A stretch of 64,000 nt of DNA from the IMG/VR virus record IMGVR_UViG_3300024520_000047, positions 181,875 through 245,874 of that record. The stretch is one strand, 5' to 3'. Positions 5,302 to 57,866 of this stretch are shown here, piece by piece (the first letter of the stretch is position 1; each line of letters begins with the position of its first letter). The notes below the pieces were generated by a model, which was not told the origin of the DNA, ran no database searches, and saw nothing but the letters and a program-made list of their open reading frames with translations. Both the position numbers and the translations under genes were made by a program.

Positions 5302-5315
5302 AACTAAAATAAAAG

Positions 5316-6853: not shown

Positions 6854-6858
6854 ATTAA

Positions 6859-10117: not shown

Positions 10118-10126
10118 ATAAATAAA

Positions 10127-10906: not shown

Positions 10907-10940
10907 AATCGATGAAGACTATAAAAAAAATATTTTATAA

Positions 10941-11795: not shown

Positions 11796-11798
11796 AAA

Positions 11799-13107: not shown

Positions 13108-13113
13108 GTAATT

Positions 13114-13836: not shown

Positions 13837-13838
13837 AC

Positions 13839-14372: not shown

Positions 14373-14379
14373 TATTAAT

Positions 14380-14931: not shown

Positions 14932-14934
14932 AAT

Positions 14935-17192: not shown

Positions 17193-17195
17193 AAC

Positions 17196-18131: not shown

Positions 18132-18144
18132 TTAAATTAGTTAT

Positions 18145-18723: not shown

Positions 18724-19009
18724 AGATTTCCAACTCGATATCATGGGAATGAAAATGATTATCGATATGGACGAATTAATAACTCAGGTTATACTTGATA
18801 AAAAAGAAATTGATGGTAAACTTGTTGATGATTTCGCTATTAATGCCCCAAAATATGAGATTTTTAGAATACTGTTAGAAGTAATTCTAACTTCTCAAGA
18901 AGAAATGGATAATAAAATGGGATATAAAAGTCTTGATAATTCAGGATTTCCCTTTAAATTAGCATTTAATACCTTAATCGAACATAAAATTTTAAAAGAA
19001 ATTAATTAA
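18692..19009 (+). CDS. Hypothetical protein
   Basis: 105-aa ORF overlapping upstream gene in operon. Confidence 0.6.
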   Translation: MNILKEMNSLKDFQLDIMGMKMIIDMDELITQVILDKKEIDGKLVDDFAINAPKYEIFRILLEVILTSQEEMDNKMGYKSLDNSGFPFKLAFNTLIEHKILKEIN

Positions 19010-19011
19010 AA

Positions 19012-20103: not shown

Positions 20104-20104
20104 T

Positions 20105-31596: not shown

Positions 31597-32307
31597 TTAA
31601 TACCCAGAAATAAAATTATCTAGTTTATTCATTAAATTAAGTGACCCAGATAACGCGTTAGATGTTAACTCTTCTTGGTCCTTTTCATGTGTTAATGATT
31701 CATCATAAAGTTCTTTTTCTTCTAAAGTTTTAAACAGATACGCACCAGGAGTAGATGGAGAAGAAACCAAGTCAAAACAAATTAATTCAAAATCATCTTG
31801 AACCACATTTTGATTTCCCTCTCGTTGTAAGGACCCCACTCCTCGAGAGGAAATTCCTAACGTTACGCCATAACGTAATAAGTTTGCTGCAATATCCCCG
31901 ACACAATCTATATTTCCAGTTTTGTGATAAGCGGGAGAAGTTAATATTTCTAACTTACCCATTAACACATTTCCGTCCCAATAAGTTTCTAATACCCTAT
32001 GTGAACTTCTTTCTAAATCTACTAAAGAAGATTCGGGGTGATTAAGTTCGGAAAGCGCACTTCCCATGTCTATCAGTTTTTGATAGTTTTGTACTTCTCT
32101 TTTTAAAATTGCTTCTGGATAAATTCTGCCGTTTCTGTTTTCTACTCCGGCTTTTTGTAAAATGGCATGAAATATTATTGGCCCTTCTTGTATAGACCTG
32201 TCTTTCATTTCTTTAATGACTTTGGTATTGTCTGATGGTGAAATTCTCCCCGCGTCGTACTCAATTAAAATACCCGTTCCTATTTCATTGGGTTTTAATA
32301 TTTTCAT
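31597..32307 (-). CDS. gp21: Prohead protease (T4 gp21-like)
   Basis: NRNGRIYP, LSELNHP, SHRV, GISSRGVGS, DLVSSPSTPGAY. Confidence 0.93.
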   Translation of the reverse strand: MKILKPNEIGTGILIEYDAGRISPSDNTKVIKEMKDRSIQEGPIIFHAILQKAGVENRNGRIYPEAILKREVQNYQKLIDMGSALSELNHPESSLVDLERSSHRVLETYWDGNVLMGKLEILTSPAYHKTGNIDCVGDIAANLLRYGVTLGISSRGVGSLQREGNQNVVQDDFELICFDLVSSPSTPGAYLFKTLEEKELYDESLTHEKDQEELTSNALSGSLNLMNKLDNFISGY

Positions 32308-36008: not shown

Positions 36009-37727
36009 TTATTTTAATCCTGTATATAACCATAAATAGTCATTGGGGTCATTTGATTTTGGTGGCAATACATGAGATGTAGCTCTTCCTGGTGTAAAAA
36101 CAGGTTTTCCGTTGTTTTTGGGTAACTTTCTTTCATCCATTGTCCAACTATCAATCATAGCTTTAGCTTGTGCAATATTGTTTTTTAATTGTGTAAAAGA
36201 ATTTTGTGCAACATATAAGGCCATAGACATAGACATAATCAAATCATCATGTTGTCCTCTCATGTGGTCAGGTCTGCCATTAATATATACAAATGTTTTT
36301 AATTCATTAAATAACCTTCTAGAATAAATCTTAAATCCAGTTCTTAATTGTTCCTCTAATGCTTGGACAATTTGAGCTCGTTTACTGTTAAAATTTATGC
36401 CTGGTACTTTGGTATCTGGGTTAAATTTCCACATTTCTGTGGCCTTAATTCCATCGTAATATAAGTCTTTATATCCAAGTTCTATCATTTTACGTGAAGT
36501 GGCTACACCCATTCCTCCAGTAATATCTATCACCACAAAACAACTATATTTGGTGGCCCATTTATGTGCCAAATCAGCGGCAATATCTGGTGGTAATTTT
36601 CCTAAATATTCTACTACTTGTTCTCTCTCATCAAAATCTATTATCTCAAAGCCAGTTGAATCCTCACTATCTCCTCGTGACACATCTATTCCCATTATAT
36701 ACTTATGCCCCACAATGGGTTCTTTCCACACCCACAAACCATTCCCCACCCATTTTTCTATAGGTTCAGTTAATTTTTCTTTTATTTTTTCCGTAGTTTC
36801 TATGGGTATAACGTTATCTCCGGACCCTAAAAACGCACATTCTAATTCCTGTGATATTTTTCTCCTATCAAACTTTAATTTCTTACACATTTCTTCAAAC
36901 CAAAAAGAAAAGGGTTTATATCCGGTTTCTATTAAAGACTCAAAATCCTCTTCTTTTTGATTAGATAATATTTTAATTTCAACATACTCTTCTCTATTTA
37001 AAAGAAAATGAACAATATCTTTAGTTTTTATCCACTGTAAATTTTTACTAAATCTAGGGTCATAATACCAACTCAAAGTACTAATTTGGAAATTATTAAT
37101 TTCTCTAATTGCTTGGTCATACACCTCATAATATATTTGGTCAAATCCGTTTGGTGTAGAGATGACAATAACCTTACCTCCTGTCGCAAGTGAGGCCATA
37201 CAAGCCGCCCATAAATTGGAACCAGCTTCGATATATGCAGCTTCATCAAAAATTAATATGGTTGGTGTATATCCACGTAACGCATCTACCGAGGTGGCAA
37301 CTGCTTTAACCTCTGAACCATTATTTAACTTATAATGTTTTTGTGAATTTTTATCTTTATCAAATCCAGAATTTACCCAATCGGGCCATTGGCGAAGAAA
37401 AGTTTTTATTTTATTTGCCATTTCCGTAGCAGTATCTAATTTATTAGCTAAAATAAGTACTTTTTCTGGACTATCTTCGGATGCAAATTGAAGTTTTTTG
37501 GATATCCAAGCTGAAGTAGCGGTAGAGACACCGGCTTGTCTATATTTGAGAACTATATTATCATCATAATTTTCAAAATCATGAATCATATTTTGTTGTT
37601 CAGGAAATAATTCAAATGGAACGTGTTTATTTTGGGTATTGTCGTATGTTTCTAAATAAGTTTTTAAGGCATAGTAGGTATCCTTATGGCATTTCACATA
37701 TTCTTGTATGAGTTCTTGTCTAGTCAT
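36009..37727 (-). CDS. gp17: Terminase large subunit (T4 gp17-like)
   Basis: LKYRQAGVST (Walker A), LIFDEAA (Walker B), ISTPNG, QELECAF, GIDVSRG, HDDLIMS. Confidence 0.95.
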   Translation of the reverse strand: MTRQELIQEYVKCHKDTYYALKTYLETYDNTQNKHVPFELFPEQQNMIHDFENYDDNIVLKYRQAGVSTATSAWISKKLQFASEDSPEKVLILANKLDTATEMANKIKTFLRQWPDWVNSGFDKDKNSQKHYKLNNGSEVKAVATSVDALRGYTPTILIFDEAAYIEAGSNLWAACMASLATGGKVIVISTPNGFDQIYYEVYDQAIREINNFQISTLSWYYDPRFSKNLQWIKTKDIVHFLLNREEYVEIKILSNQKEEDFESLIETGYKPFSFWFEEMCKKLKFDRRKISQELECAFLGSGDNVIPIETTEKIKEKLTEPIEKWVGNGLWVWKEPIVGHKYIMGIDVSRGDSEDSTGFEIIDFDEREQVVEYLGKLPPDIAADLAHKWATKYSCFVVIDITGGMGVATSRKMIELGYKDLYYDGIKATEMWKFNPDTKVPGINFNSKRAQIVQALEEQLRTGFKIYSRRLFNELKTFVYINGRPDHMRGQHDDLIMSMSMALYVAQNSFTQLKNNIAQAKAMIDSWTMDERKLPKNNGKPVFTPGRATSHVLPPKSNDPNDYLWLYTGLK

Positions 37728-43861: not shown

Positions 43862-45727
43862 TTATTTTACTTCTTCATATTCTACATCTGTAGTTTCAGG
43901 GTCATCTTCAGGTGGTGGTGTTGTGTCACCTTCAGTTTGTTCGTATAACTTACTAGAAATAGTTTGCCATTTGGAATTAAGGTCGTCCATATTAACTTTA
44001 ATTTCATCTAAATCTTCATTTTTGTGAGATTCCCTTAACTTATTAACTGATTCTTGGAGTAACTGTTTATCGTCGTCATTTAATTTTTCATCAAACTCAG
44101 TAATTTGTCTTTCCGTTTGAAAAATCATGGAATCCGCCTCATTTAGTTTATTGATTTTTTCTAACTTTTCTGAATCCTCTTTAGAGTTTTTCTCAGCTTC
44201 CATTTTCATTTTATTAATTTCTTCCTCATTGAGACTATTACCAGATTCGATTCTAATTTTTTGTTCTTTATTAGTTCCTTTATCTTTAGCACTAACACTT
44301 ATAATACCATTTGCGTCAATATCAAAAGTGACCTCAATTTGGGGAATACCTCTTTGTGCAGGTGGAATATCAGTTAATTGAAAATTACCTAATTTTCTAT
44401 TATCCATAGCCATTGGCCTTTCTCCTTGTAGTACATGAATATCTACTGCGGGTTGATTATCTATAGCTGTAGAAAATACTTGGGATTTACTCGTTGGGAT
44501 TGTAGTGTTTGCATCTATAAGTTTAGTCATAACACCCCCCATAGTCTCAATACCTAATGAAAGTGGTGTTACATCTAAAAGTAATACGTCATTAACATCT
44601 CCCGTAAGAACACCCCCTTGTATTGCAGCACCCATAGCTACAACTTCATCTGGATTTACACCTTTAAATGGTTTCTTTTTAAAAAATTTCTCAACAGATT
44701 TTTGTATAGCTGGAATTCTGGTAGACCCACCAACTAAAATAACCTCATCAATGTCTCCAATAGTTAAACCACTATCTTTAAGTGCTTTTTTACATGGGAC
44801 CATTGTTTTCGTCACTAATTTATCAATCATAGATTCGAACTTAGCTGTAGTTAGTTTTTTAACCAAGTGCTGGGGTCCTGTACTATTAGCACTTAAATAT
44901 GGTAAATTGATATCTGTGGAATTTGAAGACGACAATTCTATTTTAGCTTTTTCAGCCGTATCTTTCAATCTTTGTAAAGCGATAGCGTCTTTACTTACAT
45001 CTATTCCAGTATCTGATTTAAATTCATTAATTAACCAATCAATTATAATTTCATCAAAATTATCTCCCCCAAGATGTGTGTCTCCATTAGTAGAGAGTAC
45101 TTCAAATACACCACCACCTATTTCAAGAATAGAAACATCAAATGTTCCACCACCCAAATCGTAAACCACAACTTTTTTGTCTTGATTTTCATCTAAACCA
45201 TAAGCTAATGCCGCTGCGGTAGGTTCGTTTATAATACGTAAAACATTTAACCCAGCAATTTCACCAGCTTCTTTAGTAGCGTTTCTTTGGGAATCATTAA
45301 AATAAGCGGGTACTGTAATAACAGCATCCGTTACCTTAGTTCCTAAATACTCCTCTGCCGTTTTTTTCAAATTTTGTAAAACTATAGCTGAAATTTCTTG
45401 TGGTATATATGACTTTCCATCCACACTAATTTTAATACTATCATTAGTGCTTTTTTCTATTTTATATGGAATTTTACTTATTTCTTTTTTTATTTCACTG
45501 AATTTACTTCCAATGAATCTTTTTACCGAATAAATGGTATTTTCTGGATTAGTTACTGATTGTCTTTTTGCCGAGTCACCAATTACTCGTTCATTGCTTT
45601 TAAAAGCAACAATAGAAGGTGTTGTTCTTTTACCTTCTAAATTTACTATGACTTCAGGTGTACCACCTTCAATTACTGAAACGCATGAATTTGTGGTTCC
45701 TAAGTCAATCCCTATTACTTTTGACAT
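43862..45727 (-). CDS. dnaK: Hsp70 chaperone DnaK
   Basis: [42 protein letters not shown]; C-terminus DVEYEEVK. Confidence 0.98.
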
Positions 45728-45791: not shown

Positions 45792-45814
45792 TAAGTATAC
45801 CGTTTAATTATTTA

Positions 45815-45848
45815 TGACATACTGTCACCATATACTGACATATTGTCA
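45815..45848. promoter_or_regulatory. Tandem palindromic operator-like sites between divergent dnaK and clpC
   Basis: TGACA-TAC-TGTCA (45815-45827) and TGACA-TAT-TGTCA (45836-45848), 21 bp apart. Confidence 0.65.
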
Positions 45849-45897
45849 CTACTTGATTTTAAAAGGTATTAATGTATTATTTATAATAAAAAATGTT

Positions 45898-47949
45898 ATG
45901 ATAGAACCGACAGGAAGTTTTGCAGAATTTGAAAAGGGTAAACCCCAAAATTTACCTAAAAAAGAATCACTTTCATCGAAAAGTGGAACACCAGTACTAG
46001 ATAATTTTTCAAGAGATTTGATAAAATATGCGGAAGAAGGAAAATTAGACCCCGTGGTTGGGAGAGAAAAAGAAATTAATAGAATAGCCCAAATTTTATC
46101 ACGAAGAAAAAAAAATAATCCAGTATTAATAGGTGAACCAGGGTGTGGAAAAACCGCACTAGTAGAAGGGTTGGCTATGAAAATAAATGAAGGTAAATGT
46201 CCTCGTAATTTATTAGATAAAAGAATTGTGGGATTAGACCTAACATCCATCGTAGCTGGTACCAAATATAGGGGTCAGTTTGAAGAAAGAATGAAAGCTA
46301 TAATTGATGAATTAGTAGAACATGAAGAAATTATAATTTTTATTGATGAGATTCATACCGTCGTTGGAACCGGAAATGCTTCTGGTTCATTGGACGCCGC
46401 CAACATATTTAAACCCGCATTAGCACGGGGGGAGGTACAATGTATTGGAGCAACCACCATAAATGAATATAGAGAAAATATTGAAAAGGATGGTGCTCTA
46501 GAAAGAAGGTTTCAAAAAATAATAGTCGAACCCACAACTGTAGAAGAAACATTACAAATACTTAAAAATTTAAAAGAACGTTATGAAGAACACCATAAAG
46601 TTAATTATAGTGATGAGTCTTTAGAAGCTTGTGTGTTATTATCTGAAAGATATTTGACTCACAGAGAATTTCCAGATAAAGCTATAGATATTATGGATGA
46701 AGTGGGAGCTAAAGTACAAGTAGAATTAGAATACCCTAAAGAAATTGAGGATTTAAGACGAATACTTAGTGATTTAAAAGAAGAAAAGGTAGAGGTGGTA
46801 AAATCACAAAAATATGAAAAAGCCGCGGAATTAAGAGATAAGGAACGCACAGTTTTAGGTACTCTTGAAGAAAAAAAATTGGCGTGGGAAATGGAATTAG
46901 AAGATAGTCGTAAACCAGTAACGGAAGATGATATATATGATGTAGTTTCCCAAATAACAAAGATACCCATATCTAGATTAGACACTAATGAAACAAAAAC
47001 ATTACTGAGTTTAGAGAGCTCTCTTCAAAAAATTGTAATAGGTCAAAATGAAGCTGTCAAGAAAGTTGCAAGAGCCATCAGGCGTAATAGGGTTGGGATT
47101 AGAGATAATAAAAAACCAATTGGTTCTTTCATGTTTTTAGGTTCCACGGGTGTTGGTAAAACTCACTTAGCTAAAGCGATTGCACGTGAGGTGTTCGGTA
47201 ATGAAGATTCTTTAATACGGTTAGATATGTCAGAATATAAAGAAAAATTCAATTCAACAAGATTGATTGGTTCACCACCTGGATATGTTGGTTATAATGA
47301 AGGGGGTCAACTAACTGAAGCTGTTCGCAAAAAACCCTATTCGGTAATATTGTTAGATGAAATAGAAAAAGCTCATTCCGATATTTATGACCTATTATTA
47401 CAAATATTTGATGAAGGGCATATAACTGATAGTTTAGGGAGAGTCATTAATTTTAAAAATACCCTTATCATTATGACCTCTAATGTGGGAGCTAAACAAA
47501 TGGGTGAATTTTCAAACCCTTTAGGGTTCACAACGAAAGATTCTGAATCAAGAACAGAGGAAGCGGTATCACAAATATTGAAAAAAGCACTAAAAAATAC
47601 CTTTAAGCCAGAATTTCTAAATAGGGTAGAACATAATATAATATTTAAAAGTTTAGAAAAAAAATCTATTAGTAAAATAGTAAGGTTGGAACTGAATCAC
47701 TTACAAGAAAGATTAAAAGAAAAAAAATACCACATGACTTTTGATAAAAAGGTAACTGATTTTATTGTAAAAGAAGGGTATGACGATAAATTCGGTGCAA
47801 GACCAATAAAAAGAGCAATTCAAAATAAGTTAGAAGATTTTATTTCTGAAGAAATATTAAAAGGAAATGTCGTGGAACACAATACCTACACTATGAGAAT
47901 TAATAAAGATAATGAAATTACTATAAACGAAGAAAGTGATAATGAGTAG
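45898..47949 (+). CDS. clpC: ClpC-type AAA+ unfoldase lacking the N-terminal Clp_N domain
   Basis: Two Walker A motifs ([16 protein letters not shown]), UVR coiled coil ([10 protein letters not shown]), ClpP-binding LGF loop; start moved from 45814 to 45898 as the extra 28 codons cover the operator. Confidence 0.88.
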
Positions 47950-47953
47950 TTTA

Positions 47954-50341
47954 TTAGGCAATAACTGCTCCATATGAACCAGTAACTATCCAACCAGCAT
48001 CTGCATCCCAAAGTAAATCAATCGAATCTCCCGCATCTGTTAGTGTAAAACTACTATATGGGCTAGTCCACGTATTAATGGTCATGGAACCAGTAAGTGA
48101 ATCGTCATACACATAAATAGTCAATCTTTGTCCCTGACTACCATTAGGTAAAGACCCCGGAGCCGGGGACGAACCTATTTGTGCTATTCTCCAAATAGAT
48201 TTTTTACTTATAGAGGGTGAAACATCGGCATCTGTAGTTACTATCCCTGTTTTATGTATTTGAGCTTCTGCGATTAAAGTATCACCTATGTAAGTAGTAC
48301 TTAATGTAGTTACCCCTGTGCCCGTTAAATCACCATCAACAACAGCTTCAGGGCCTATTGTAACGGGTGAACAACCAGTTATGGTAGACACGTATAATGT
48401 TCCACCAAACTCACATAAATCTACATTGGGCATATAAACTGTATCGTCGGCATTTCCTGTAATGCCAAACCCACCAAGTACTGCACTTCTATCTCCATTG
48501 ACTATGGAGTTAAAAGAATGTGCAAATGAAGTTAAACCTGAAGCTGTGGAACCACTACCCCCCGCGTGGGAACCTGAACCAGCCGCTACAGTTTTAATAT
48601 TTTGAGCATGAGACGCGTCTCCTGACGCTATGGGCCCAATATCGGTTGGTCCTGGGATGCCTATCTCAATATTTGGTCCTCCTTCTGCATGTGCCCACTT
48701 ACCACTAGCAATTGTATTATGTCCTTGAGCGTGAGAACCATAATTACCACTTGCAATCGTATAACCACCTTCAGCGTGAGAACCTGTACCTGAGGCTAGA
48801 GTATTATATCCTTCAGCGTGACCTACTGCCTCTGTTGTTGCAGAGGTTTGGTATCCCTCAACGTGTGAATAATCAGCGTCTGCTGTAATAATTGTCTGAT
48901 ATCCTTCACCATGTGAATAATTACCTATAACTGTAGTGTAAAATCCTTCCGCGTGAGAATAATCACCATGAGCTTTTGTTCCTCTTCCTTCCGAGTGTGC
49001 TGTAACTCCAGTTGCTTCTGTTTGGAATCCTTGAGCGTGACAATAATATTTTGCTCCACTGCCCGCTAATGTCCCATATCCTTCTGCGTGAGACATATGA
49101 GTCATAGCAGATGTTTGGGCCCCTTCAGCGTGAGACCCAATACCTAAAGCATACCCACCAATATAGAGACTAGCCCCAGGAAGTATATAACCACCTTCAG
49201 CGTGAGAACAAGCTCCTATAGCTAGTGACCCATATCCTTCTGCGTGAGAAACTTGTCCACTAGCTAAGGTAAAACCACCTTCTGCGTGAGCACCCATTGT
49301 AGTTGCTGAAGTAGGTGCTATTGTAGGTAAGTCTCCAGTTTTTATTGAGCCACCTTCAGCGTGTGAAGCAGTACCACTTGCGAGATTCCCCCACCCTTCA
49401 GCGTGAGAATAGTTTTCTATTGCTCTTGTATAAGACCCTTCAGCATGGGACGACAGTCCACTAGAAATTGTAGTGTGTCCTTCAGCGTGTGAAGCTATAC
49501 CATACGCTTTAGTATCTATGCCTTCAGCGTGTGAACCATAACCTATCGCTGTCGTATCTTTACCTTCAGCGTGAGATGTGTCTCCAGTTGCCCACGAACT
49601 GTCTCCCTCCGCATGAGAATAGTTCCCTTCAGCTTGTGTACTTATACCTTCCGCATGTGAACTATTACCATATGCTTGAGTGTCTGTACCTTCAGCGTGT
49701 GAACCCTGTCCTGTTGCTATAACACCAGTTTTCCACCCATAACCTTCCGCGTGAGCACCTCTACCGATAGCTATATTAGTCGCCAACCCACCATCACTGT
49801 ACCCCTCAACGTGTGAACCATAACCTATCGCTGTCGTATCTTTACCTTCAGCATGAGATGAAGTTCCCGTCGCCCAAGTGTTTTCGCCTTTAGCGTGAGA
49901 ATAGTTCCCTTCAGCTAATGTGGTACTTCCCCACGCTATAGAATTAATGCCTGTTGCGGATGAAGTAATATGTTGGATAGGACTATGTTCTGTAACAGCA
50001 TCTAAACACGCGTATCTATTATTTATATATAAATTAGTTATACAACTACCACTTCCACCACTAAATACAGTATCTGCGGGGTCTAATAGACCAAACATTA
50101 TCGTATCTCCCGAAATAAAGGTTGTAATTCCGCTGGTTCCTTGAAGTCGTCTAAAATTTAATGCCCCATCATTAGGGTTAGCTGTCTTACTCACATAGAG
50201 ACCTATACCACCAGAACCTAGATTATTTCCAATGGTATTATCTATTTTTTGACTTAAAATACTAAGATTACCATCTAACTCACCATGAGTTAATGCGTTA
50301 CTTTGGCTTAATCTTAAATAAAATGGAATTGGTAATGGCAT
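47954..50341 (-). CDS. Tail fibre/adhesin with ~30 SHAEG beta-roll repeats
   Basis: 14-aa xxTxAxGxxSHAEG repeats (YadA-head-like); N-terminal LTHGELDGN; TATTTAT at 50359-50365. Confidence 0.75.
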   Translation of the reverse strand: MPLPIPFYLRLSQSNALTHGELDGNLSILSQKIDNTIGNNLGSGGIGLYVSKTANPNDGALNFRRLQGTSGITTFISGDTIMFGLLDPADTVFSGGSGSCITNLYINNRYACLDAVTEHSPIQHITSSATGINSIAWGSTTLAEGNYSHAKGENTWATGTSSHAEGKDTTAIGYGSHVEGYSDGGLATNIAIGRGAHAEGYGWKTGVIATGQGSHAEGTDTQAYGNSSHAEGISTQAEGNYSHAEGDSSWATGDTSHAEGKDTTAIGYGSHAEGIDTKAYGIASHAEGHTTISSGLSSHAEGSYTRAIENYSHAEGWGNLASGTASHAEGGSIKTGDLPTIAPTSATTMGAHAEGGFTLASGQVSHAEGYGSLAIGACSHAEGGYILPGASLYIGGYALGIGSHAEGAQTSAMTHMSHAEGYGTLAGSGAKYYCHAQGFQTEATGVTAHSEGRGTKAHGDYSHAEGFYTTVIGNYSHGEGYQTIITADADYSHVEGYQTSATTEAVGHAEGYNTLASGTGSHAEGGYTIASGNYGSHAQGHNTIASGKWAHAEGGPNIEIGIPGPTDIGPIASGDASHAQNIKTVAAGSGSHAGGSGSTASGLTSFAHSFNSIVNGDRSAVLGGFGITGNADDTVYMPNVDLCEFGGTLYVSTITGCSPVTIGPEAVVDGDLTGTGVTTLSTTYIGDTLIAEAQIHKTGIVTTDADVSPSISKKSIWRIAQIGSSPAPGSLPNGSQGQRLTIYVYDDSLTGSMTINTWTSPYSSFTLTDAGDSIDLLWDADAGWIVTGSYGAVIA

Positions 50342-50388: not shown

Positions 50389-51210
50389 TTAAAAGAGTAA
50401 TTGGGAATAATCTTTTTCTTGGTGTTTAAATGTATGTCTAGTATTCCCCAGCTTTTTAAGAATATTTTTTCCTAGTAAAATTGCATTACTAACATCTTCT
50501 ACTACAACATATTCATTTTTTGTGTGGTATCTATAATAACCAGTTGCAAAATTTAAACATGGAAAATCAAAATTTTTCTTTAACATCATTGTGTCGGTAT
50601 ATGGATGATATAACCATTTAATATACCCGTGATTTAATATAATATCCTTAACTGATTCAAAAAACAAACTTTTTTCTTCATACAGTTGGACACCCATTAA
50701 AGTTTTACTCATTGTATCATTTTCTGTAGAGTCAAATTGTATTGCGTAGCCCACATTTTTAAAAAACTCTGGGTCTGCTTGTTTTGAACCGTGACATCCA
50801 GTTTCTTCTGCAACGGGAAAGAAAACTTTACACGTGTCTACTTCTCGAAGAATTTCCATACATGTAAACACCCCAGCTTTATCGTCTCCACCAATACCTG
50901 TTGGTTCTCCAGTTTCTTTTTCATAAGCTTTTAAAGCAAATTTAGGTTCATTTTGTGCATTTAACCTATATTCCTCCTCTATAACCATATCAACTTTTGG
51001 GTGAACAGTATCTAAGTGAGCAACCAAGCAAGGATAAATCTCACTCTGGCCTTTGGTAATATAAAGACACCCCAAGTCGTCTTGATAAAAGGACACACCA
51101 TTTATTTGTTGTAACTCATTTATCAAAAATTCAATTAGGTCGTCTTCCTCCCAAGTATAGGTCGGAACGGCTAACAAATTTTTTAATCGTTGTAATTGTT
51201 TATTTTCCAT
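50389..51210 (-). CDS. M20/M28/M42-type zinc metallopeptidase
   Basis: VAHLDTVH, GGDDKAG, AEETGCHGS metal-ligand motifs. Confidence 0.8.
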   Translation of the reverse strand: MENKQLQRLKNLLAVPTYTWEEDDLIEFLINELQQINGVSFYQDDLGCLYITKGQSEIYPCLVAHLDTVHPKVDMVIEEEYRLNAQNEPKFALKAYEKETGEPTGIGGDDKAGVFTCMEILREVDTCKVFFPVAEETGCHGSKQADPEFFKNVGYAIQFDSTENDTMSKTLMGVQLYEEKSLFFESVKDIILNHGYIKWLYHPYTDTMMLKKNFDFPCLNFATGYYRYHTKNEYVVVEDVSNAILLGKNILKKLGNTRHTFKHQEKDYSQLLF

Positions 51211-51442: not shown

Positions 51443-51516
51443 GCTCCCGTAGCTCAACTGGATAGAGCAACAGCCTTCTAAGCTGTAGGTTATAGGTTCG
51501 AGTCCTATTGGGAGTA
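51443..51516 (+). tRNA. trnR: tRNA-Arg (UCU)
   Basis: Full cloverleaf: GCTCCCG/TGGGAGT acceptor, ACAGC-CTTCTAA-GCTGT anticodon arm, ATAGG-TTCGAGT-CCTAT T arm; CCA not encoded. Confidence 0.95.
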
Positions 51517-51599
51517 CGTAAAAAATTTTGTAATATTCTTTGTATTGTCAAGTATTTATATTACATTTATAATTAGTTCTTTGAAAATATTTAAAATAT

Positions 51600-52026: not shown

Positions 52027-52137
52027 AAGTGGGTACCTGAGACGGACGCTTCGTAGCCTGTAATGGATAGAATGGGTAAGACCATTTAGGGTATTAATCT
52101 CCATTGAGACCCGCGTTCTTGGAGAACCCACTTTTTT
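52027..52137 (+). ncRNA. Putative structured RNA downstream of tmRNA
   Basis: Closing helix AAGTGGGT/ACCCACTT plus nested helices AATGGA/TCCATT, AATGG/CCATT, ACGG/CTGT, then T-run. Confidence 0.4.
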
Positions 52138-52981
52138 ATTTTCCTAAATTTTGGGTGAATTTACCCATATATTTTTGTAGTAAGTCACTCATGATGCCTC
52201 CACCATCTGACTTACTCTGTTGGTATGAAGCCGCGGTATCTGTTGGTGGTTCCTCAACCTTTTCACCGTACTTCACTTTTTCTTTTCCCTCTTTTTCTTT
52301 ATCATCAAGTACGCCCTGTACCTCATCTTTCTTTTGTTTTAATTTACCACATAAAACCTCTTTTACTTTTCCTTCTATTTCTTGATATATAGCACTATTG
52401 TCCCCTATATCAGTTAAACTATTACGTAATACCTGTTCAAAAGTACCGTCAAGCCCTATAGTAGATTCACCTAATTTAAAAGCTCCATATTCTATAATTC
52501 CTTTTGTTAGAAATGGTGCTAAAAAGTTACAATCAAGTAATTTGGGGATGTCCCATATTGGTACGTTTCCTAATGCAATCCCTACAAATTTTCCTAACTC
52601 TCCTGTTATTCCAAAAGTCCCTAATAACCACCTCCATAACTTTTCTCTTACGGTACCCCATAAAGAACCCAAAATACCTTGATTCTGGGACATCGTGAAC
52701 TCCTGTTCTGACAAATATTTTTTATTATGTTTTAAAGAATAAGAAATTTCATCTAATGTAAATCCCCTACTTGTAAGACGATGCATATCTCTAACAAAAT
52801 TTTCACATATAACATCAGGTGATTTCCCAATATTTTTACGTTCAAATCGGTCTGCCCAATTAATTAATCTTATGTTTTTGGATTCAGATAACACTGGTTG
52901 TTTGGGTATCGACATTTCAGATTGTGCTACACTCTCAATAAATTCAACTAATTCTGACTCTGTAAATTTAATTTTTGACAT
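52136..52981 (-). CDS. Putative internal head protein with amphipathic/hydrophobic helices
   Basis: N-terminal KIKFTESELVEFI leader, LSE sites, Gly/Trp-rich hydrophobic middle. Confidence 0.65.
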   Translation of the reverse strand: MSKIKFTESELVEFIESVAQSEMSIPKQPVLSESKNIRLINWADRFERKNIGKSPDVICENFVRDMHRLTSRGFTLDEISYSLKHNKKYLSEQEFTMSQNQGILGSLWGTVREKLWRWLLGTFGITGELGKFVGIALGNVPIWDIPKLLDCNFLAPFLTKGIIEYGAFKLGESTIGLDGTFEQVLRNSLTDIGDNSAIYQEIEGKVKEVLCGKLKQKKDEVQGVLDDKEKEGKEKVKYGEKVEEPPTDTAASYQQSKSDGGGIMSDLLQKYMGKFTQNLGK

Positions 52982-52988: not shown

Positions 52989-55271
52989 TTATTTTTTTCT
53001 ATTTCTTCGTTTATTTTGACGTGCTCTACGTTTTTCTTTTTTGGTTGGTTTTGGGTCTCCTTTTCCCGTCAATCCATATTCAGATTTAACTTTAGAACTT
53101 CCACCCCCAATAAAATTAAAGTCATCATAACAGTGAGATAAGGCTTGATATACATTTTTACCACCTTTTTTAGGTAATAATTCAGCACTATAACTAATTA
53201 AATCCTTACACCCTTCTTTTGTTGGTGCTAATTTAACCTCATCTTCTAATGTCTTCGTAATGTTTTTCATATCTTCTTGGGTCCCTTTAAATTCGGGTAC
53301 TTTAACTTCTTGATTGGAGGAAGCTACGTCCTCTTTAGGTGTGGACATTGCTTTTAACATAAAAGAAGCGGTTTCTGGGCCAATAACTCCGTCAACCTTT
53401 AATCCGTTAGTCGATTGATAATTTTTAACAGCAGTGTGGGTTGAATCATCAAATACGCCGCTTTCATTCATTCTTAAAAATTTCTGTATTCTATTGATTG
53501 ATGTCCCTTTTTGTCCTTTTTTAATTAATCCGTTTCCCGCTGCGGCATCTTCTAATGATGGAGCAGTGGTTGCACTTGGTGTAGATTTTTCTTTCTTTTC
53601 TTTACTACTACTATTGTCATCCCCACTTCTTCTTCTGCTAATTTTATGTCTGTCATCATCAGAGTCATATTTTACAGTATACTTACCTTCACTAACTAAT
53701 TGACTTTCATTTAAAACTTTTCTTAAATCATGAATAGACTCTTCTAATACCTCAAAATCATTAACCCCCATTGCCATAGATATCGCGGCACCTTGTATAA
53801 CACTTGGTTTTCTTTTTGCTGTATTTGGGTTATCCTCCACTAAATCATCTATATATTCATCAGCTGTTCCTTCAGGTCCTTCTATCATATCTAAGGTTTC
53901 ACCTTTTTCATAAACCACACCATTAACCTCTATATCATCACTTAAAGTCATTAAATCACTACCTTCGTCAGCCTTATTAAATATTTTCATTACTTTAGCT
54001 TTATCTTCATCATCTTCTATAACAAATGTTTCACCATCTAAAGTCCTAAAGTATACTTTATCTTCAGAATTTTCAATATATTCAAACATTCCCATATAAT
54101 CTTTACTACCAGCACCAAAAACTATTGCAGTATTAGACGCCCCTGCTGTGTCTACAAAGACATCCACAGTCTGACCACCAAAAAGAGTTTTAAATGTTAT
54201 TCGATAGGCTGGTAATCCTTCTGGTCTTTCAAATAAATCCTTAGACAGGTCTTCCATCTCTTTTTCTAAATCTTCTATAGTATAAATTCTTTTTCCGTTA
54301 ATTATACATAAAGGTTTATCTTGTAATATAGTTAAAATGGGTTGGAAATCTGATTCATTTAATTCGTCACCCAATTCTTCTATTAAAGAACCATATTTTA
54401 AATCATAGATTCCTGTTAAGTGAGAACAATCATATAATGTAGCTACATTTCTAAAGGCATTGTATATACTTTCTTCATCTGTACCCGCACCTTCAGTAGC
54501 ACCAAACGAAATAAAATCCACTAATCCTTTACCGAAATATTTTTCACCACCTTCTGTAGCGTCTTGAATCATGTCAGCTAACCCCGCTAATTGTGCTTCG
54601 CTTTGAAAGGTAAATGGGATTTCTTCAGTTAATCCCTGCTTTTCAGCTTCGTCATATACCGCAGGATTAAAAGCAATTGCTAATATGTCTTCTTGACTTA
54701 GTGTACCACCATTTGCCCATTGTTCCATGGATGCTGCCGCGTCTCCCGGTCCCTTTCCAGACATATTACTAGCTGCCAGATATCCTCCGCCCCCCAATAC
54801 GGTTAAAGCTTTTAACCCTCCTAAAACACGTGCATTTAAAATAGATTTACTTTGGGCGGCAGTTAATGTTTTTGCTCCACCGGGTAATTTTCCTAAACTT
54901 AATCCACCAGAAGCTATTTTACCAACATTCTTGGTCCCTAAACCAGCTTTAGCTAACCCACCTGTTGGTACTTTGGTAATCCCCCGCATAAATTTAGGTA
55001 AAACACGTGCTCCACCTCGTGCAATCCATGGTCCTAATCTTGCTAATCCACCTACAATAGCCCCCCAAAACTCTAGTTGTAATTCCCCATCAATTGGTGG
55101 TGTATCGGTGATAATTTCTTTGTTTTCTTTTATAACTTTAGGTTTTATTCTACTGTCATTGGTATTTCCCAACAATACCTTTTTAGTTTTTGATGGAAAA
55201 TCCTTACTGTAACTCTCCAAATAGACCATTTTTTTTAATTCTTCCTCAAGTGTTTTTTTTGGTTTTTTCAT
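52989..55271 (-). CDS. Multidomain virion protein: Gly-rich membrane helices, annexin repeat, peptidoglycan-binding domain
   Basis: GAGTDEESI...LGDEL annexin repeat; LIKKGQKG...VKNYQSTNGLKVDGVIGPET PG_binding_1 motif. Confidence 0.75.
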   Translation of the reverse strand: MKKPKKTLEEELKKMVYLESYSKDFPSKTKKVLLGNTNDSRIKPKVIKENKEIITDTPPIDGELQLEFWGAIVGGLARLGPWIARGGARVLPKFMRGITKVPTGGLAKAGLGTKNVGKIASGGLSLGKLPGGAKTLTAAQSKSILNARVLGGLKALTVLGGGGYLAASNMSGKGPGDAAASMEQWANGGTLSQEDILAIAFNPAVYDEAEKQGLTEEIPFTFQSEAQLAGLADMIQDATEGGEKYFGKGLVDFISFGATEGAGTDEESIYNAFRNVATLYDCSHLTGIYDLKYGSLIEELGDELNESDFQPILTILQDKPLCIINGKRIYTIEDLEKEMEDLSKDLFERPEGLPAYRITFKTLFGGQTVDVFVDTAGASNTAIVFGAGSKDYMGMFEYIENSEDKVYFRTLDGETFVIEDDEDKAKVMKIFNKADEGSDLMTLSDDIEVNGVVYEKGETLDMIEGPEGTADEYIDDLVEDNPNTAKRKPSVIQGAAISMAMGVNDFEVLEESIHDLRKVLNESQLVSEGKYTVKYDSDDDRHKISRRRSGDDNSSSKEKKEKSTPSATTAPSLEDAAAGNGLIKKGQKGTSINRIQKFLRMNESGVFDDSTHTAVKNYQSTNGLKVDGVIGPETASFMLKAMSTPKEDVASSNQEVKVPEFKGTQEDMKNITKTLEDEVKLAPTKEGCKDLISYSAELLPKKGGKNVYQALSHCYDDFNFIGGGSSKVKSEYGLTGKGDPKPTKKEKRRARQNKRRNRKK

Positions 55272-55314: not shown

Positions 55315-56259
55315 TTATTGTCCTTGCATGGCACCAACCATTTCTTCTTGGTCTTTAATATTTAACGAATCAAAAGCTTCCTCACCTTCTTTTGAACCTA
55401 AAAATTCTTTAAATTTACTATTCACATCTCCCTCTGACATGGTGTCTATTGCGGCACTTCCACCCGCAATACCTGTTAACCACCCAATAAATTTAACCCA
55501 TAGTTTAGTTCTATTCAATAATCCCTTACGTTGCATTCTCGTTAAAATACCCCCACTTCTAAATATTCTTATATTTTTTACCCCTTTAGCTGATAATTCC
55601 GCAGCTTCTCTAAAAACTCTACTATACGTTTTTACATCTTTGGAAAATGTCTTTAAAAATGGTACTTTACCTAATTTTGCTGCGGTTTTTGCTAAAAATC
55701 CAGTAACTTTAGAATCTCCCATTGCTCCCAAGACAGCTTTTCCTTCTTTAGTTTTTCCCATATTTTTTGCCACCTTAAGTGCATCACCAGTTTTTAATCC
55801 AGCATTAATTGCTGTTTTATTAACCTTCCCCAATTTCATAATACCAATAAATGGTTTGGCTATTAAATCTCCAACGTAAGGCACAACAGAAATTAAACTT
55901 AACATACCATATAACATATCACCCTGTCTAAAATAAGATACAGCATTAACTGTATCCGCTATTCCGGTTGGGTCTACAATACCAACCACATCTAACATTG
56001 TATTATACCACCTACTTTCTTGTAGTGGGTTTGCCTTTCCTCTACTAATAGAATATGTGTCAGCCCAGTGAGTTACCCCACCAGCGGGATTTGCCGGTCC
56101 TCTTGTTAACCCAGACTCCCATTGTTTAGCTCCTGTTCCACCAGCATCTGAAACACCAGTTTCTACACCAGCACCTTCAGTGCCACCTTCAAGTTCTTGT
56201 TCTTCAAGTGAGGTTCGTATAATAGATATTAGTTCTGTTTCACTGAGAAATACCTTCAT
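55315..56259 (-). CDS. Putative internal head protein with pre-toxin TG-like domain
   Basis: LDVVGIVDPTGIADTVNAVSY...GDMLYGMLSLISVVPYVG; N-terminal KVFLSETELISII leader. Confidence 0.6.
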   Translation of the reverse strand: MKVFLSETELISIIRTSLEEQELEGGTEGAGVETGVSDAGGTGAKQWESGLTRGPANPAGGVTHWADTYSISRGKANPLQESRWYNTMLDVVGIVDPTGIADTVNAVSYFRQGDMLYGMLSLISVVPYVGDLIAKPFIGIMKLGKVNKTAINAGLKTGDALKVAKNMGKTKEGKAVLGAMGDSKVTGFLAKTAAKLGKVPFLKTFSKDVKTYSRVFREAAELSAKGVKNIRIFRSGGILTRMQRKGLLNRTKLWVKFIGWLTGIAGGSAAIDTMSEGDVNSKFKEFLGSKEGEEAFDSLNIKDQEEMVGAMQGQ

Positions 56260-56261: not shown

Positions 56262-56561
56262 TTAACCATTCATTTTAACATCAACAGTGACTGTTACACC
56301 GACTTTACCATCATTTGTCTTCCACTTCCATGTTTTCTTTAGCTTATCGTCTTCTAAGGTTTCAGTCATACTTTTATTACGAAGACTAAAAGCTCCTTTA
56401 GTTGCTTCCAAATGACCAACAACATCCTTAAAAGTTTTTTCTGCTGATGGATGTGATTTTGTTGGTGTTGGTTCGTCTTGTTTTTCTTCTTGTTCCTTTA
56501 AAGTCGTTTCTATTACTTTAATTAATTCACTTTCAGTAAGTCTAATTGTTTTATTTTTCAT
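56262..56561 (-). CDS. Small protein with RLTESELIKVI leader
   Basis: 99-aa ORF in operon. Confidence 0.65.
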   Translation of the reverse strand: MKNKTIRLTESELIKVIETTLKEQEEKQDEPTPTKSHPSAEKTFKDVVGHLEATKGAFSLRNKSMTETLEDDKLKKTWKWKTNDGKVGVTVTVDVKMNG

Positions 56562-56960: not shown

Positions 56961-57866
56961 ATGAAAAATATATTAACTACAGTACTTTTAATTATATGTA
57001 TCTTATCATTTAATAGTTGTAAGAAATATGAATTTGATGAGCCGTTGCCCACTATTGAGAATAATGAATGGATATTACAAAGTGGTAGGGTTTACGTGGA
57101 AAATTTAGATAATGGTGAACTTAAATATTATGACCATTTTGGTCCTAATAGAACTACTAGTAATTTAGACATTTTTGGTGGTTCACAGAGTGATATAGAT
57201 AATATTAACATTTCTCAAACCTCTTGGTATTTTTCAGATGGTAATTTTATTTTAGATAACTCGGTTTATTATGGATATACATCTATGGGTAGTGGTATAA
57301 ATGTGCAATATACAATAATTGGAGTGCCACCATTTGGGTCTTCACGTAATATTGGTGTTTTAGAATTAAACGACAATATTCTTACTATTATTGTATATGA
57401 ATCTAATGAATCCCATAATGGGGTTAACTACCATTATTTTTCTACATTAACATTTAAACGTATAGGTACAACGTGTTCTACATGCACTACAGAATCAATA
57501 AATGGTTATACGTATTCTGGTATCGTGGGTACAGTTATAGAAGAACCCACCACTTTAGATGGTACTTCGTGGATAATTACTCGTTATGATGAAGGAATGG
57601 CACCATATTACCCTAATGATACACTAACATTTATAAGTCAGGTGGTTTATACCTTAAATAATACTGGCGGATATACTTATTCCCTATCTAATATCGCTGG
57701 TAACAACATGCATAGTTTAACATTATATGATTGTACCACTTTTGGTGGTAACTATAGTGGTCAATTATCTCTTTCATTTATTGAAGCTGGAGAAATTAAT
57801 AATGTGACTATGACTGGTGTGTTTGGCACAAACGGTACTATCCAAGTGTGGATGGAGAAATTATAA
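56961..57866 (+). CDS. Lipoprotein with two beta-rich (lipocalin-like) domains
   Basis: Signal peptide II ending FNS-C followed by KKYEFDE (K/D/E-rich Bacteroidota lipoprotein export signal). Confidence 0.75.
   Translation: MKNILTTVLLIICILSFNSCKKYEFDEPLPTIENNEWILQSGRVYVENLDNGELKYYDHFGPNRTTSNLDIFGGSQSDIDNINISQTSWYFSDGNFILDNSVYYGYTSMGSGINVQYTIIGVPPFGSSRNIGVLELNDNILTIIVYESNESHNGVNYHYFSTLTFKRIGTTCSTCTTESINGYTYSGIVGTVIEEPTTLDGTSWIITRYDEGMAPYYPNDTLTFISQVVYTLNNTGGYTYSLSNIAGNNMHSLTLYDCTTFGGNYSGQLSLSFIEAGEINNVTMTGVFGTNGTIQVWMEKL

What the first reader, a model, noticed from the sequence alone, without database searches (positions are those of the whole stretch)
54330..54600. Canonical annexin repeat in a phage protein that also carries a peptidoglycan-binding domain
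Seen: GAGTDEESI followed by LGDEL with the acidic cap exactly 39 residues after the GxGT threonine. Known: this is the spacing of the annexin type II Ca2+ site (annexin A5 repeat 1 reads GLGTDEESI...LKSEL). The same 760-aa protein has Gly-rich hydrophobic helices after an LEF site (WGAIVGGLARLG...) and a PG_binding_1 domain near 53365-53530. Inference: a Ca2+-dependent phospholipid-binding, peptidoglycan-anchored protein that could help build a trans-envelope DNA conduit. Annexins are mostly eukaryotic with sporadic bacterial examples, so a phage one would be unusual.
Basis: partly seen in the sequence, partly recalled or inferred. Interest (0 to 1): 0.78.

Follow-up and report, generated by a model that had tools for sequence, protein, structure and literature searches.

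The report
Divergent annexin repeat in a jumbo-phage protein
A 760-residue protein of an uncultured marine T4-like jumbo phage really does carry one divergent annexin repeat (the animal-type calcium/membrane-binding module) next to a cell-wall-binding domain, so it most likely works at the host's membrane/cell-wall interface; this use of annexin by phages turned up in none of my searches of the held paper library.

Summary
GAGTDEESI (aa 261-269) and the acidic cap E303, 39 residues after T264, lie at window 54360-54491 on the minus strand, in a 760-aa ORF (52989-55271).

It is homology, not chance:
- The motif residues are invariant in 18 homologues.
- A family profile finds only annexins in the PDB.
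- In 1.84 billion proteins it recovers multi-repeat proteins; 10 of 10 tested are Pfam Annexin.
- hhalign against those repeats gives 99.0 % probability, E 4.6e-18.
- The AlphaFold model superposes on single annexin repeats (Z 7-8, rmsd 2-3 Å).

"Canonical" is too strong. Pfam's own model does not match the sequence, there is one repeat rather than four, and the A-B loop holds a conserved 20-residue aromatic insertion.

PG_binding_1 is confirmed. The genome is a T4-like jumbo phage, and the family is essentially confined to viral contigs.

New here: the three flanking genes share an N-terminal tag ending in [L/I]xE, which resembles T4's capsid-targeting sequence.

My best reading, inferred and not shown: a virion-packaged, protease-matured protein, ejected into the periplasm, that bridges membrane and peptidoglycan. 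The trans-envelope conduit idea remains untested.

The parts
52989..55271 (-). 760-aa multidomain protein (g760): propeptide-like N-terminus, basic Gly-rich region, helical domain with one annexin repeat, beta-rich domain, PG_binding_1, C-terminal helical domain, basic tail
   Evidence: ORF. 22 full-length homologues, aligned. Full-length model.
55071..55271 (-). aa 1-67: conserved charged N-terminus (M1, K5, L8, E10, E11 invariant; a one-residue-shorter variant of the neighbours' tag), ending at invariant E67 (L-x-E followed by W/F in most homologues). Proposed propeptide.
   Evidence: The cleavage is an inference.
54747..55070 (-). aa 68-175: basic glycine-rich amphipathic region (23 % Gly, no Asp/Glu, net +15). 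The shorter relative P0143 has a segment here that weakly matches Pfam Gly-zipper models, just below their cut-offs.
54237..54746 (-). aa 176-345: helical domain made of three N-terminal helices (invariant F201, P203, Y206), the annexin repeat and a beta-hairpin (K319, P320, I323 invariant; I324, G326 nearly so)
   Evidence: Domain model with pLDDT 83 and pTM 0.80. ESM Atlas viral clusters match the whole unit at TM 0.54-0.65.
54315..54608 (-). aa 222-319: single annexin repeat (helices A-E)
   Evidence: hhalign 99.0 %, E 4.6e-18. Profile against the PDB: top 19 hits all annexins. Foldseek top 50 all annexins or annexin A2 fusion constructs. VIA Z 8.0, rmsd 2-3 A. Search independent of Foldseek: 72 of the 73 residues of annexin I domain 1 aligned at rmsd 2.1 A.
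54492..54551 (-). aa 241-260: family-specific insertion in the A-B loop (GGEKYFGKGLVDFISFGATE). It is highly conserved, aromatic and low-pLDDT, and resembles a partial copy of the following ATEGAGT motif.
   Evidence: Absent from the shorter relatives P0143, P0077 and P0082.
54474..54491 (-). aa 261-266: GAGTDE, the endonexin / type II Ca2+-loop motif
54363..54368 (-). D302-E303: acidic cap, E303 at T264+39
53592..54236 (-). aa 346-560: beta-rich domain(s) of unknown fold
   Evidence: No convincing match.
53328..53558 (-). aa 572-648: PG_binding_1 domain
   Evidence: Pfam 39.1 bits. VIA Z 10.8 to the SleB N-terminal domain and 10.2 to phiKZ gp144.
52992..53294 (-). aa 660-760: C-terminal helical domain with invariant C688 and C714, followed by a strongly basic tail
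56262..56561 (-). g99: first gene of the conserved module, carrying the N-terminal tag (MKNKTIRLTESELIKVIE...)
55315..56259 (-). g314: tagged neighbour with Gly/Lys-rich amphipathic segments
52136..52981 (-). g281: tagged downstream neighbour with Gly-rich hydrophobic segments
31597..32307 (-). gp21-like prohead maturation protease, the enzyme proposed to process the tags. It lies between the portal (33875-35683) and the major capsid protein (27974-29770), as in T4.
   Evidence: phrog_207, E 1.5e-43. Portal, capsid protein and terminase.

Best explanation
g760 is a phage-specific envelope-acting protein built around one divergent annexin repeat.

Shown:
- Residues 222-319 are homologous to annexin repeats. 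They keep the GxGT(D/E) loop and the acidic cap that form the type II Ca2+ site.
- Three extra N-terminal helices pack against the lone repeat, and a conserved aromatic insertion extends its membrane-facing A-B loop.
- With no hydrophobic segment in between, the chain continues into a PG_binding_1 domain.
- The protein belongs to a conserved three- or four-gene module whose other products share an N-terminal tag.

Inferred:
- Annexin sites need high-micromolar to millimolar Ca2+, and peptidoglycan is periplasmic. So both domains should act outside the cytoplasm, where seawater supplies about 10 mM Ca2+ (general knowledge). The annexin loop would hold phospholipid head groups while PG_binding_1 holds the wall.
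- The protein has no Sec signal and no strong transmembrane helix. I therefore propose it reaches the periplasm from the virion.
- The shared tag would act like T4's capsid-targeting sequence and load the module's proteins into the prohead core.
- The gp21-like protease would cut at [L/I]xE sites. In g760 the site is the invariant E67. Cleavage would leave a glycine-rich basic N-terminus free to insert into membrane once the protein is ejected ahead of, or with, the DNA.
For: Annexin homology:
- Invariant motif residues.
- PDB profile search in which the top 19 hits are all annexins, best E 2.3e-5.
- 516 hits at E<=1e-3 in 1.84e9 proteins. The non-family hits carry 2-9 repeat matches, and 10/10 tested are PF00191.
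- hhalign 99.0 %, E 4.6e-18.

Fold:
- Domain model pLDDT 83.
- Foldseek top 50 all annexins or annexin A2 fusion constructs.
- VIA Z 8.0.
- In an independent search of 48,161 chains, annexin is the second fold after PG_binding_1.

PG_binding_1.

Recurrent architecture (tag or N-terminus, Gly-zipper or TM, one annexin repeat, PG_binding_1):
- Seen in the distant relatives P0143 and P0077.
- P0082 has the tag, the TM segment and the repeat. Its downstream gene is an M23 peptidase carrying the same tag.

Phage setting:
- T4-like head module with gp21-like protease.
- Family found in 12 IMG/VR loci, but only one partial hit in 185,579 species genomes.

Tag:
- Present on g99, g314 and g281, and on their counterparts in every related locus examined.
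- Also on otherwise unrelated proteins, Fe-SOD and M23.
- 26 of 30 non-redundant tags contain [LIM]xE ending at aa 10-30, against 29 % of other ORFs.
- E67 is invariant and lies directly before the hydrophobic segment. An [L/I]xE also lies within about 10 residues upstream of the Gly-zipper or TM segment in P0143, P0077 and P0082.

T4 precedent: diverse internal proteins share only a capsid-targeting sequence, and gp21 removes their N-terminal peptides (PMC3012670, PMC9958956). Giant-phage ejection-protein paralogues share propeptides that contain cleavage motifs (PMC5694885).
Against: - No virion, cleavage, Ca2+ or lipid data exist. The phage is uncultured, and no deposited phage has a homologue.
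- Pfam's Annexin model does not match this sequence.
- The A-B loop insertion is modelled with pLDDT below 50, so the Ca2+-site geometry is unverified.
- The tag HMM does not score g760's own N-terminus. In the window's own protein the site before E67 reads LQLE, with Leu at P4 and P2 rather than P3.
- The [LIM]xE enrichment partly follows from the tag's own Glu/Leu-rich composition.
- Small phage proteins with a real TM helix plus one annexin repeat and no tag (P0127, P0156) show that this domain is also used by proteins presumably made and inserted in the infected cell.
- The module is about 17 kb from the head genes.
Confidence: 0.45

Rival explanations
1. The domains are the same, but the protein is made late in infection and stays in the infected cell. 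The glycine-rich segment anchors it in the inner membrane with N-terminus in and C-terminus out. The periplasmic annexin and PG_binding_1 domains then tether or remodel the envelope, as a lysis accessory, a membrane-wall tether, or a block to superinfection.
For: Small phage relatives consist of one true TM helix plus one annexin repeat with no tag (P0127, P0156). P0143, P0077 and P0082 have strongly hydrophobic Gly-zipper or TM segments before the repeat. P0082 lies next to an M23 peptidase, and an SLT gene lies near P0143. PG_binding_1 is commonest in endolysins.
Against: g760 has no segment reaching a TM-like hydropathy (maximum 1.29). There is no catalytic domain and no lipobox. This reading does not explain why soluble g99, a SOD and an M23 peptidase share the N-terminal tag, nor the invariant Glu before the hydrophobic segment.
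Confidence: 0.3
2. It is a tail or baseplate-associated cell-puncturing accessory, like a tape-measure or hub protein that carries wall-binding and membrane-active segments, rather than a head-internal protein.
For: Glycine-rich hydrophobic segments and wall-directed domains are common in tape-measure and hub proteins (general knowledge). A PG_binding_1 hit lies in a Vibrio phage protein annotated 'baseplate hub subunit and tail lysozyme'. A YadA-repeat fibre-like gene (47954-50341) is nearby.
Against: No similarity to any tail protein family in PHROGs or in the structure searches. The protein is not the long helical type typical of tape measures. The shared N-terminal tag is unexplained.
Confidence: 0.1
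3. The annexin-derived repeat survives only as a structural or protein-binding helical module and no longer binds Ca2+ or phospholipid.
For: It is a single repeat with a long insertion next to the Ca2+ loop. The x of GxGT is Ala, not the hydrophobic or Trp residue linked to membrane binding in PMC3894181. Pfam does not match.
Against: The Ca2+-ligand signature (G261, G263, T264, D/E265, E266, D302, E303) is invariant or nearly so across lineages only 40 % identical. That is hard to explain without selection on the site. The repeat is always paired with a membrane-active segment.
Confidence: 0.15
4. The motif is a chance resemblance in an unrelated helical region.
For: A single-sequence phmmer search of the PDB gives only E 0.03, and Pfam gives nothing.
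Against: The profile, profile-profile and fold evidence all converge on annexin.
Confidence: 0.01

Closest known systems
Annexin repeat (Pfam PF00191), especially the single- and multi-repeat bacterial annexins described by Kodavali et al. 2014 (PMC3894181)
   Same: A five-helix repeat with the GxGTD loop and an acidic cap 38 residues on. The nearest sequence relatives are bacterial-type repeats. Bacterial annexins, like this protein, can be single-repeat and fused to TM segments or other domains.
   Different: Below Pfam's threshold. A 20-residue conserved aromatic insertion sits in the A-B loop. A three-helix N-terminal extension stands in for a partner repeat. The repeat is fused to PG_binding_1. 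The family is encoded by phages and essentially absent from cellular genomes.
T4 internal proteins (IPI, IPII, IPIII, Alt) with their capsid-targeting sequence, processed by gp21
   Same: Adjacent, otherwise unrelated genes share only a short N-terminal amphipathic tag ending in [L/I]xE, in a genome with a gp21-like protease and T4-like head genes (PMC3012670, PMC9958956).
   Different: No sequence similarity to the T4 tag was shown. Packaging and cleavage are untested. T4 internal proteins are small and act in the cytoplasm, whereas g760 is 760 aa with domains suited to the periplasm.
Ejection proteins of T7 (gp14/15/16, where gp16 carries a lytic transglycosylase domain) and of phiKZ/SPN3US-type giant phages
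   Same: As a concept: capsid-internal proteins that leave with the DNA, engage peptidoglycan and membrane, and (in giant phages) carry shared propeptides cut at x-E motifs (PMC5694885; T7 from general knowledge).
   Different: No homology was detected. g760 has a wall-binding domain but no wall-cleaving domain. T7 has no contractile tail.
Phage lysins carrying PG_binding_1, e.g. phiKZ gp144 (3bkh) and Burkholderia AP3 endolysin (5nm7)
   Same: The PG_binding_1 fold, Z 9.9-10.2.
   Different: No catalytic domain was found in g760.

Membership tests
Annexin (PF00191 / annexin superfamily) | Repeat of about 70 residues with five helices A-E | tested here: met
   Model helices 225-240, 266-274, 279-293, 296-303 and 306-317. 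VIA rmsd 2.0-3.0 A over 71-82 residues with Z up to 8.0. 72 of the 73 residues of annexin I domain 1 aligned.
Annexin (PF00191 / annexin superfamily) | [quoted passage not shown] | tested here: met
   GAGTDE at aa 261-266. G263, T264 and E266 are invariant, G261 nearly so.
Annexin (PF00191 / annexin superfamily) | Acidic residue 38 residues after the motif's Thr (type II Ca2+ site cap) | tested here: met
   E303 is T264+39. D302 and E303 are invariant.
Annexin (PF00191 / annexin superfamily) | Score above Pfam's gathering threshold for PF00191 | tested here: not met
   No hit for the whole protein at E<=1 or for the segment at E<=10. The distant relatives P0077 and P0143 reach 21.6-21.7 bits against a cut-off of 25.
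Annexin (PF00191 / annexin superfamily) | Statistically significant profile-level homology to certified annexin repeats | tested here: met
   hhalign 99.0 %, E 4.6e-18 over 64 columns. hmmsearch of the PDB gives E 2.3e-5 with annexins as the top 19 hits. 10/10 tested non-family hits are PF00191.
Annexin (PF00191 / annexin superfamily) | Core of four (or eight) repeats, as in eukaryotic annexins | tested here: not met
   One repeat only. Single-repeat annexins are known in bacteria (PMC3894181).
Annexin (PF00191 / annexin superfamily) | Ca2+-dependent binding to acidic phospholipids | not testable with these tools
   Needs biochemistry.
PG_binding_1 (PF01471) | Sequence match above the curated cut-off, and the three-helix fold | tested here: met
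   39.1 bits against 23. Z 10.8, rmsd 1.5 A to the SleB N-terminal domain.
PG_binding_1 (PF01471) | Binding to peptidoglycan | not testable with these tools
   Needs a pull-down assay.
T4-type capsid-targeted internal/ejected proteins | A short N-terminal tag shared by otherwise unrelated, often adjacent, proteins | tested here: met
   Tag HMM hits at the N-terminus of g99, g314 and g281, of their counterparts in every related locus examined, and of SOD and M23 proteins. g760's own N-terminus is only a loose variant and is not scored by the HMM.
T4-type capsid-targeted internal/ejected proteins | gp21-family prohead protease in the genome and [L/I]xE sites at the end of the tag | tested here: inconclusive
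   Protease is phrog_207, E 1.5e-43. 26/30 tags have [LIM]xE against 29 % background, but the tag's composition biases this. The protease's specificity is unknown.
T4-type capsid-targeted internal/ejected proteins | Presence in the virion, N-terminal processing, ejection | not testable with these tools
   Uncultured phage. No homologue in deposited phage genomes.
Glycine-zipper membrane segments (PF13488 / PF13441) | Match to the Gly-zipper models | tested here: inconclusive
   No Pfam hit in g760. P0143 scores 24.7 bits against a cut-off of 25. g760 aa 68-175 is Gly-rich, but basic and only weakly hydrophobic.

The most novel reading that the evidence does not exclude
Marine T4-like jumbo phages package a conserved set of tagged proteins. 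The largest uses an annexin repeat (Ca2+ and phospholipid), a peptidoglycan-binding domain and a protease-unmasked glycine-rich N-terminus to bridge wall and inner membrane. That would help a contractile-tailed phage get its DNA across the periplasm. It would be the first viral use of annexin chemistry, and a new, sequence-recognisable capsid-targeting signal for loading cargo (including enzymes such as SOD and M23 peptidase) into phage heads.
Probability: 0.25. Interest if true: 0.8.

Novelty: new variant of a known kind. Interest (0 to 1): 0.6.

Why it matters
Annexins are treated as eukaryotic membrane-repair and trafficking proteins with a few bacterial outliers. Here a divergent single repeat serves as a building block of phage proteins. 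It is always next to a membrane-active segment and often next to a wall-binding domain. Hundreds of unannotated viral relatives sit in metagenomic clusters.

If the repeat binds lipid with Ca2+, three things follow:
- Phages gain a previously unrecognised way to grip host membranes.
- Data are added to the open question of where annexins came from.
- The poorly understood step in which myovirus DNA crosses the periplasm and inner membrane becomes testable.

The shared N-terminal tag, if it is a capsid-targeting signal, would allow ejected-protein repertoires to be predicted from sequence in uncultured T4-like phages.

Tried and rejected
- Pfam on the whole protein and on the isolated segment gave no Annexin hit. 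Profile methods were needed.
- PHROGs matched only the PG_binding part, as 'endolysin' families, with no catalytic region.
- tblastn against 50,697 deposited phage records found nothing beyond PG_binding_1. Queries were g760, its annexin segment, g314, g281, P0156 and P0143. So no cultured relative and no proteomics can be borrowed.
- The T4 late-promoter motif TATAAATA is not enriched (23 observed, 18 expected) and not informative upstream of the module.
- Hydropathy scan found no TM-grade segment in g760. I therefore rejected 'integral membrane protein' as the default reading.
- The beta-rich domain (aa 346-560) and the C-terminal helical domain gave no meaningful structural or feature matches. 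The 'IpIV internal head protein' row (score 0.48) and the 'PT-TG' row for g314 (0.84) are below the tool's own noise guidance and were not used.
- Source names for family members are uninformative: 'hypothetical protein' or 'peptidoglycan hydrolase-like'.
- Four literature searches, three of them on annexin in phages, found nothing on a phage annexin.
- I could not inspect model coordinates. The Ca2+-site geometry and the C688-C714 distance were therefore not measured.
Full report

The finding lies in a 760-codon ORF on the minus strand, 52989..55271.
- GAGTDEESI is residues 261-269 (54491..54465) and LGDEL is residues 300-304 (54374..54360).
- E303 is exactly 39 residues after T264, leaving 38 between them. 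This is the spacing of the annexin type II site.
- Across all six reading frames of the window, G.GT[DE]-x37-[DE] occurs once.

**2. Is it an annexin repeat or a look-alike?**

Single-sequence methods are weak.
- Pfam gives no Annexin hit, even for the excised segment at E<=10.
- phmmer against PDB sequences finds only annexins IV/A4 and V, at E 0.03-0.25.

Twenty-two homologues exist in metagenomes. In the 18 full-length ones I aligned (41-78 % identity), G263, T264, E266, E298, E299, L300, D302 and E303 are invariant.

A profile of residues 218-332 (alignment A2) gives much stronger evidence.
- Against PDB sequences its top 19 hits are all annexins, best E 2.3e-5.
- Against 1.84 billion representative proteins it finds 516 proteins at E<=1e-3. 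Outside the family these typically match 2-9 times, over profile positions of about 40-105.
- All ten that I tested are Pfam Annexin, E 5e-12 to 2e-78.
- hhalign between the family profile and 37 repeats cut from those certified annexins gives 99.0 % probability, E 4.6e-18, over 64 columns. The aligned region runs from the GxGT loop through helix E.

Structure agrees.
- An AlphaFold2 model of residues 176-348, built from family sequences only, has pLDDT 83 and pTM 0.80.
- Its 50 best Foldseek matches in the PDB are all annexins or annexin A2 fusion constructs. Most have probability above 0.9, and E-values of 0.05-0.5 are as expected for a 70-residue unit.
- VIA-align gives Z up to 8.0 with rmsd 2.0-3.0 Å over 71-82 residues.
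- A search of 48,161 chains that does not rely on Foldseek, run on the full-length model, ranks PG_binding_1 first. Annexin is the next fold found. The 73-residue NMR structure of annexin I domain 1 aligns over 72 residues at 2.1 Å.

I conclude the repeat is a true, divergent annexin homologue with its Ca2+-site signature under selection.

**3. In what ways is it not canonical?**

- There is one repeat, not four.
- The sequence is below Pfam's threshold.
- Between helix A (225-240) and GAGT lies a 20-residue insertion, GGEKYFGKGLVDFISFGATE. It is among the most conserved stretches of the family, yet it is modelled with pLDDT below 50.
- The insertion is aromatic and begins like a second copy of the following ATEGAGT. 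The shorter relatives P0143, P0077 and P0082 lack it and have an ordinary A-x-x-G-x-G-T-D-E junction.
- Three helices precede the repeat, carrying invariant F201, P203 and Y206. A conserved beta-hairpin (K-P-h-x-I-I-N-G-K) follows it.
- ESM Atlas clusters of 153-179-residue, mostly viral (57-93 % Uroviricota) proteins match this whole unit at TM 0.54-0.65. One cluster carries PF00191 in 23 % of its members.

So a 'phage annexin-like domain' of about 150 residues exists as a unit. I infer that the extra helices replace the partner repeat against which annexin repeats normally pack.

**4. The rest of the protein**

The full-length model (pLDDT 62) shows the following:

| Residues | Feature |
|---|---|
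| 1-139 | disordered |
| 176-345 | helical domain with the annexin repeat |
| 346-560 | beta-rich domain(s) |
| 572-648 | PG_binding_1 |
| 660-735 | helical domain with invariant C688 and C714 |
| 741-760 | basic tail |

- Residues 68-175 are 23 % Gly, have no acidic residue and carry net charge +15. Their best 19-residue hydropathy is 1.29, below a transmembrane helix.
- No catalytic domain was found.

**5. Genomic setting**

- The window is from a phage. It holds a gp23-like major capsid protein (27974-29770), a portal (33875-35683), a large terminase (36009-37727) and a gp21-like prohead protease (31597-32307). The head genes are in T4 order.
- The capsid protein is nearest to those of Flavobacterium, Microcystis and Rhodothermus myoviruses and of huge uncultured phages.
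- The source contig is 246-293 kb.
- The family occurs in 12 IMG/VR loci. In 185,579 bacterial and archaeal species genomes it gives one partial hit, on a small MAG contig.
- No deposited phage genome has it.

**6. A conserved, tagged gene module (new)**

g760 sits between g99 (56262-56561) and g314 (55315-56259) upstream, and g281 (52136-52981) downstream.
- These three begin with the same roughly 18-residue tag, K-x-[IV]-x-L-T-E-S-E-L-x-x-[IF]-I-E.
- The same arrangement holds in all eight loci scanned that carry a full-length g760-family gene. This includes a clade only 40 % identical, where the module is 199 aa, 767 aa and 260 aa.
- An HMM of the tag also finds it at the N-terminus of otherwise unrelated proteins in these phages. 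Examples are an Fe-superoxide dismutase (weakly, E 0.39), an M23 peptidase directly downstream of the annexin protein P0082, and P0077 and P0082 themselves.
- g760's own N-terminus (K-x-L-x-E-E-L-x-K) looks like a one-residue-shorter variant. It is invariant at M1, K5, L8, E10 and E11, but the HMM does not score it.
- Most tags end in [L/I/M]xE: 26 of 30, against 29 % of other ORFs. This comparison is biased by the tag's composition.
- In g760 an invariant Glu (E67; L-x-E in most homologues) directly precedes the hydrophobic, glycine-rich segment. An [L/I]xE also lies within about 10 residues upstream of the Gly-zipper or TM segment in P0143, P0077 and P0082.

**7. How it most likely works**

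Shown: the domain identities, their order, their conservation and the module.

Inferred:
- Annexin type II sites need far more Ca2+ than bacterial cytoplasm holds, and peptidoglycan is periplasmic (established knowledge). With no hydrophobic segment between them, both domains should act in the periplasm, which in seawater sees about 10 mM Ca2+.
- The protein has neither a signal peptide nor a TM-grade helix.
- In T4, diverse internal proteins share only an N-terminal capsid-targeting sequence that loads them into the scaffolding core. gp21 then clips their N-termini, and it removes 65 residues from gp23 (PMC3012670, PMC9958956).
- Giant-phage ejection-protein paralogues likewise share propeptides with cleavage motifs (PMC5694885).

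The tagged module, the [L/I]xE sites and the gp21-like protease fit that scheme. I therefore commit to this sequence of events: packaging into the head, maturation at E67, ejection at infection, insertion of the freed glycine-rich N-terminus into membrane, Ca2+-bridged binding of the annexin loops (lengthened by the aromatic insertion) to phospholipid, and anchoring to peptidoglycan.

My confidence by tier:
- about 0.9 that it is an annexin homologue;
- about 0.7 that it acts outside the cytoplasm at the membrane-wall interface;
- about 0.4-0.45 that it is delivered by the virion.

Whether it forms part of a DNA conduit is not addressed by any evidence here.

**8. Rivals**

- An inner-membrane-anchored protein made in the infected cell, acting as a lysis accessory, a tether or a superinfection block (0.3). 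Small TM-plus-annexin phage proteins without a tag support this.
- A tail or hub accessory (0.1).
- An annexin-derived module that has lost Ca2+ and lipid binding (0.15; independent of where the protein acts).
- Chance (about 0.01).

**9. Comparison with the known, and novelty**

- By homology it belongs to the annexin superfamily. It fails Pfam's threshold and the four-repeat architecture.
- It is closest to the bacterial single- and multi-repeat annexins, most of which come from marine Bacteroidetes (PMC3894181). That paper reports TM regions and toxin or protease fusions, but does not mention phages or peptidoglycan at all.
- My searches of the held library found no paper on a phage annexin.
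- I rate it a new variant of a known kind.

**10. Verdict**

Interest is 0.6. The homology is solid, the context is new and recurrent, and the tag module is a useful lead. The function rests on inference, and the phage is uncultured.

Noticed in passing
window 52136-52981, 55315-56259, 56262-56561 (all minus strand); L003, L011-L019: The three genes flanking g760 share an N-terminal tag of about 18 residues (..RLTESELxxIIE..) that ends in [L/I]xE. The module is conserved in every related phage locus examined.
   Followed up: yes
L003 1783-2430; L009 7886-8527; L009 2215-5255: The same or a similar tag (K-I-T-x-x-Q-L-R-x-I-I-R-E) heads unrelated proteins in related phages. These include an Fe-superoxide dismutase (weak match, E 0.39), an M23 peptidase and several small ORFs, as expected of a cargo-targeting signal.
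   Followed up: partly
ESM Atlas clusters; P0127, P0156 (L023, L024): At least four mostly viral clusters (60-262 members each) of 153-179-aa proteins share the fold of residues 176-325. The examples I read are one TM helix plus one annexin repeat, and none is annotated.
   Followed up: partly
window about 4078-20905 (+): A long run of glycosyltransferases and three nucleotide-sugar epimerase genes, i.e. a polysaccharide-synthesis gene block carried by the phage.
   Followed up: no
window 43862-45727 (-) and 45814-47949 (+): Phage-encoded DnaK/HSP70 and a ClpB-like double-AAA protein, syntenic with the annexin module in related contigs (L003, L006, which also has HSP20 and KTSC genes).
   Followed up: partly
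window 47954-50341 (-): A 795-aa protein with YadA_head repeats. Its N-terminus (MPLPIPFYLR...) is shared with a 1105-aa protein in L001, so it is probably a fibre or adhesin.
   Followed up: no
window 56961-57866 (+); L003 7208-8119: A conserved ORF with a lipoprotein-type signal (hydrophobic stretch, then SFNSC / FTSC), on the opposite strand next to the module.
   Followed up: no
window 51443-51517 (+); 50389-51210 (-): tRNA-Arg(TCT), and an M20/M42-like peptidase gene just downstream of the module. The peptidase is syntenic in L003 and L001.
   Followed up: no
window 29590-29770 (MCP residues 1-60): The major capsid protein has ..HLINE|ATT.. at residue 60. This is close to where T4 gp23 loses its 65-residue propeptide and fits an [L/I]xE-specific protease.
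   Followed up: no
L005 584-1810 (P0031): A 408-aa metagenomic protein combines PG_binding_1 with three canonical annexin repeats. The annexin plus wall-binding pairing therefore also exists outside this phage family. The contig is too short to tell whether it is phage or bacterium.
   Followed up: partly
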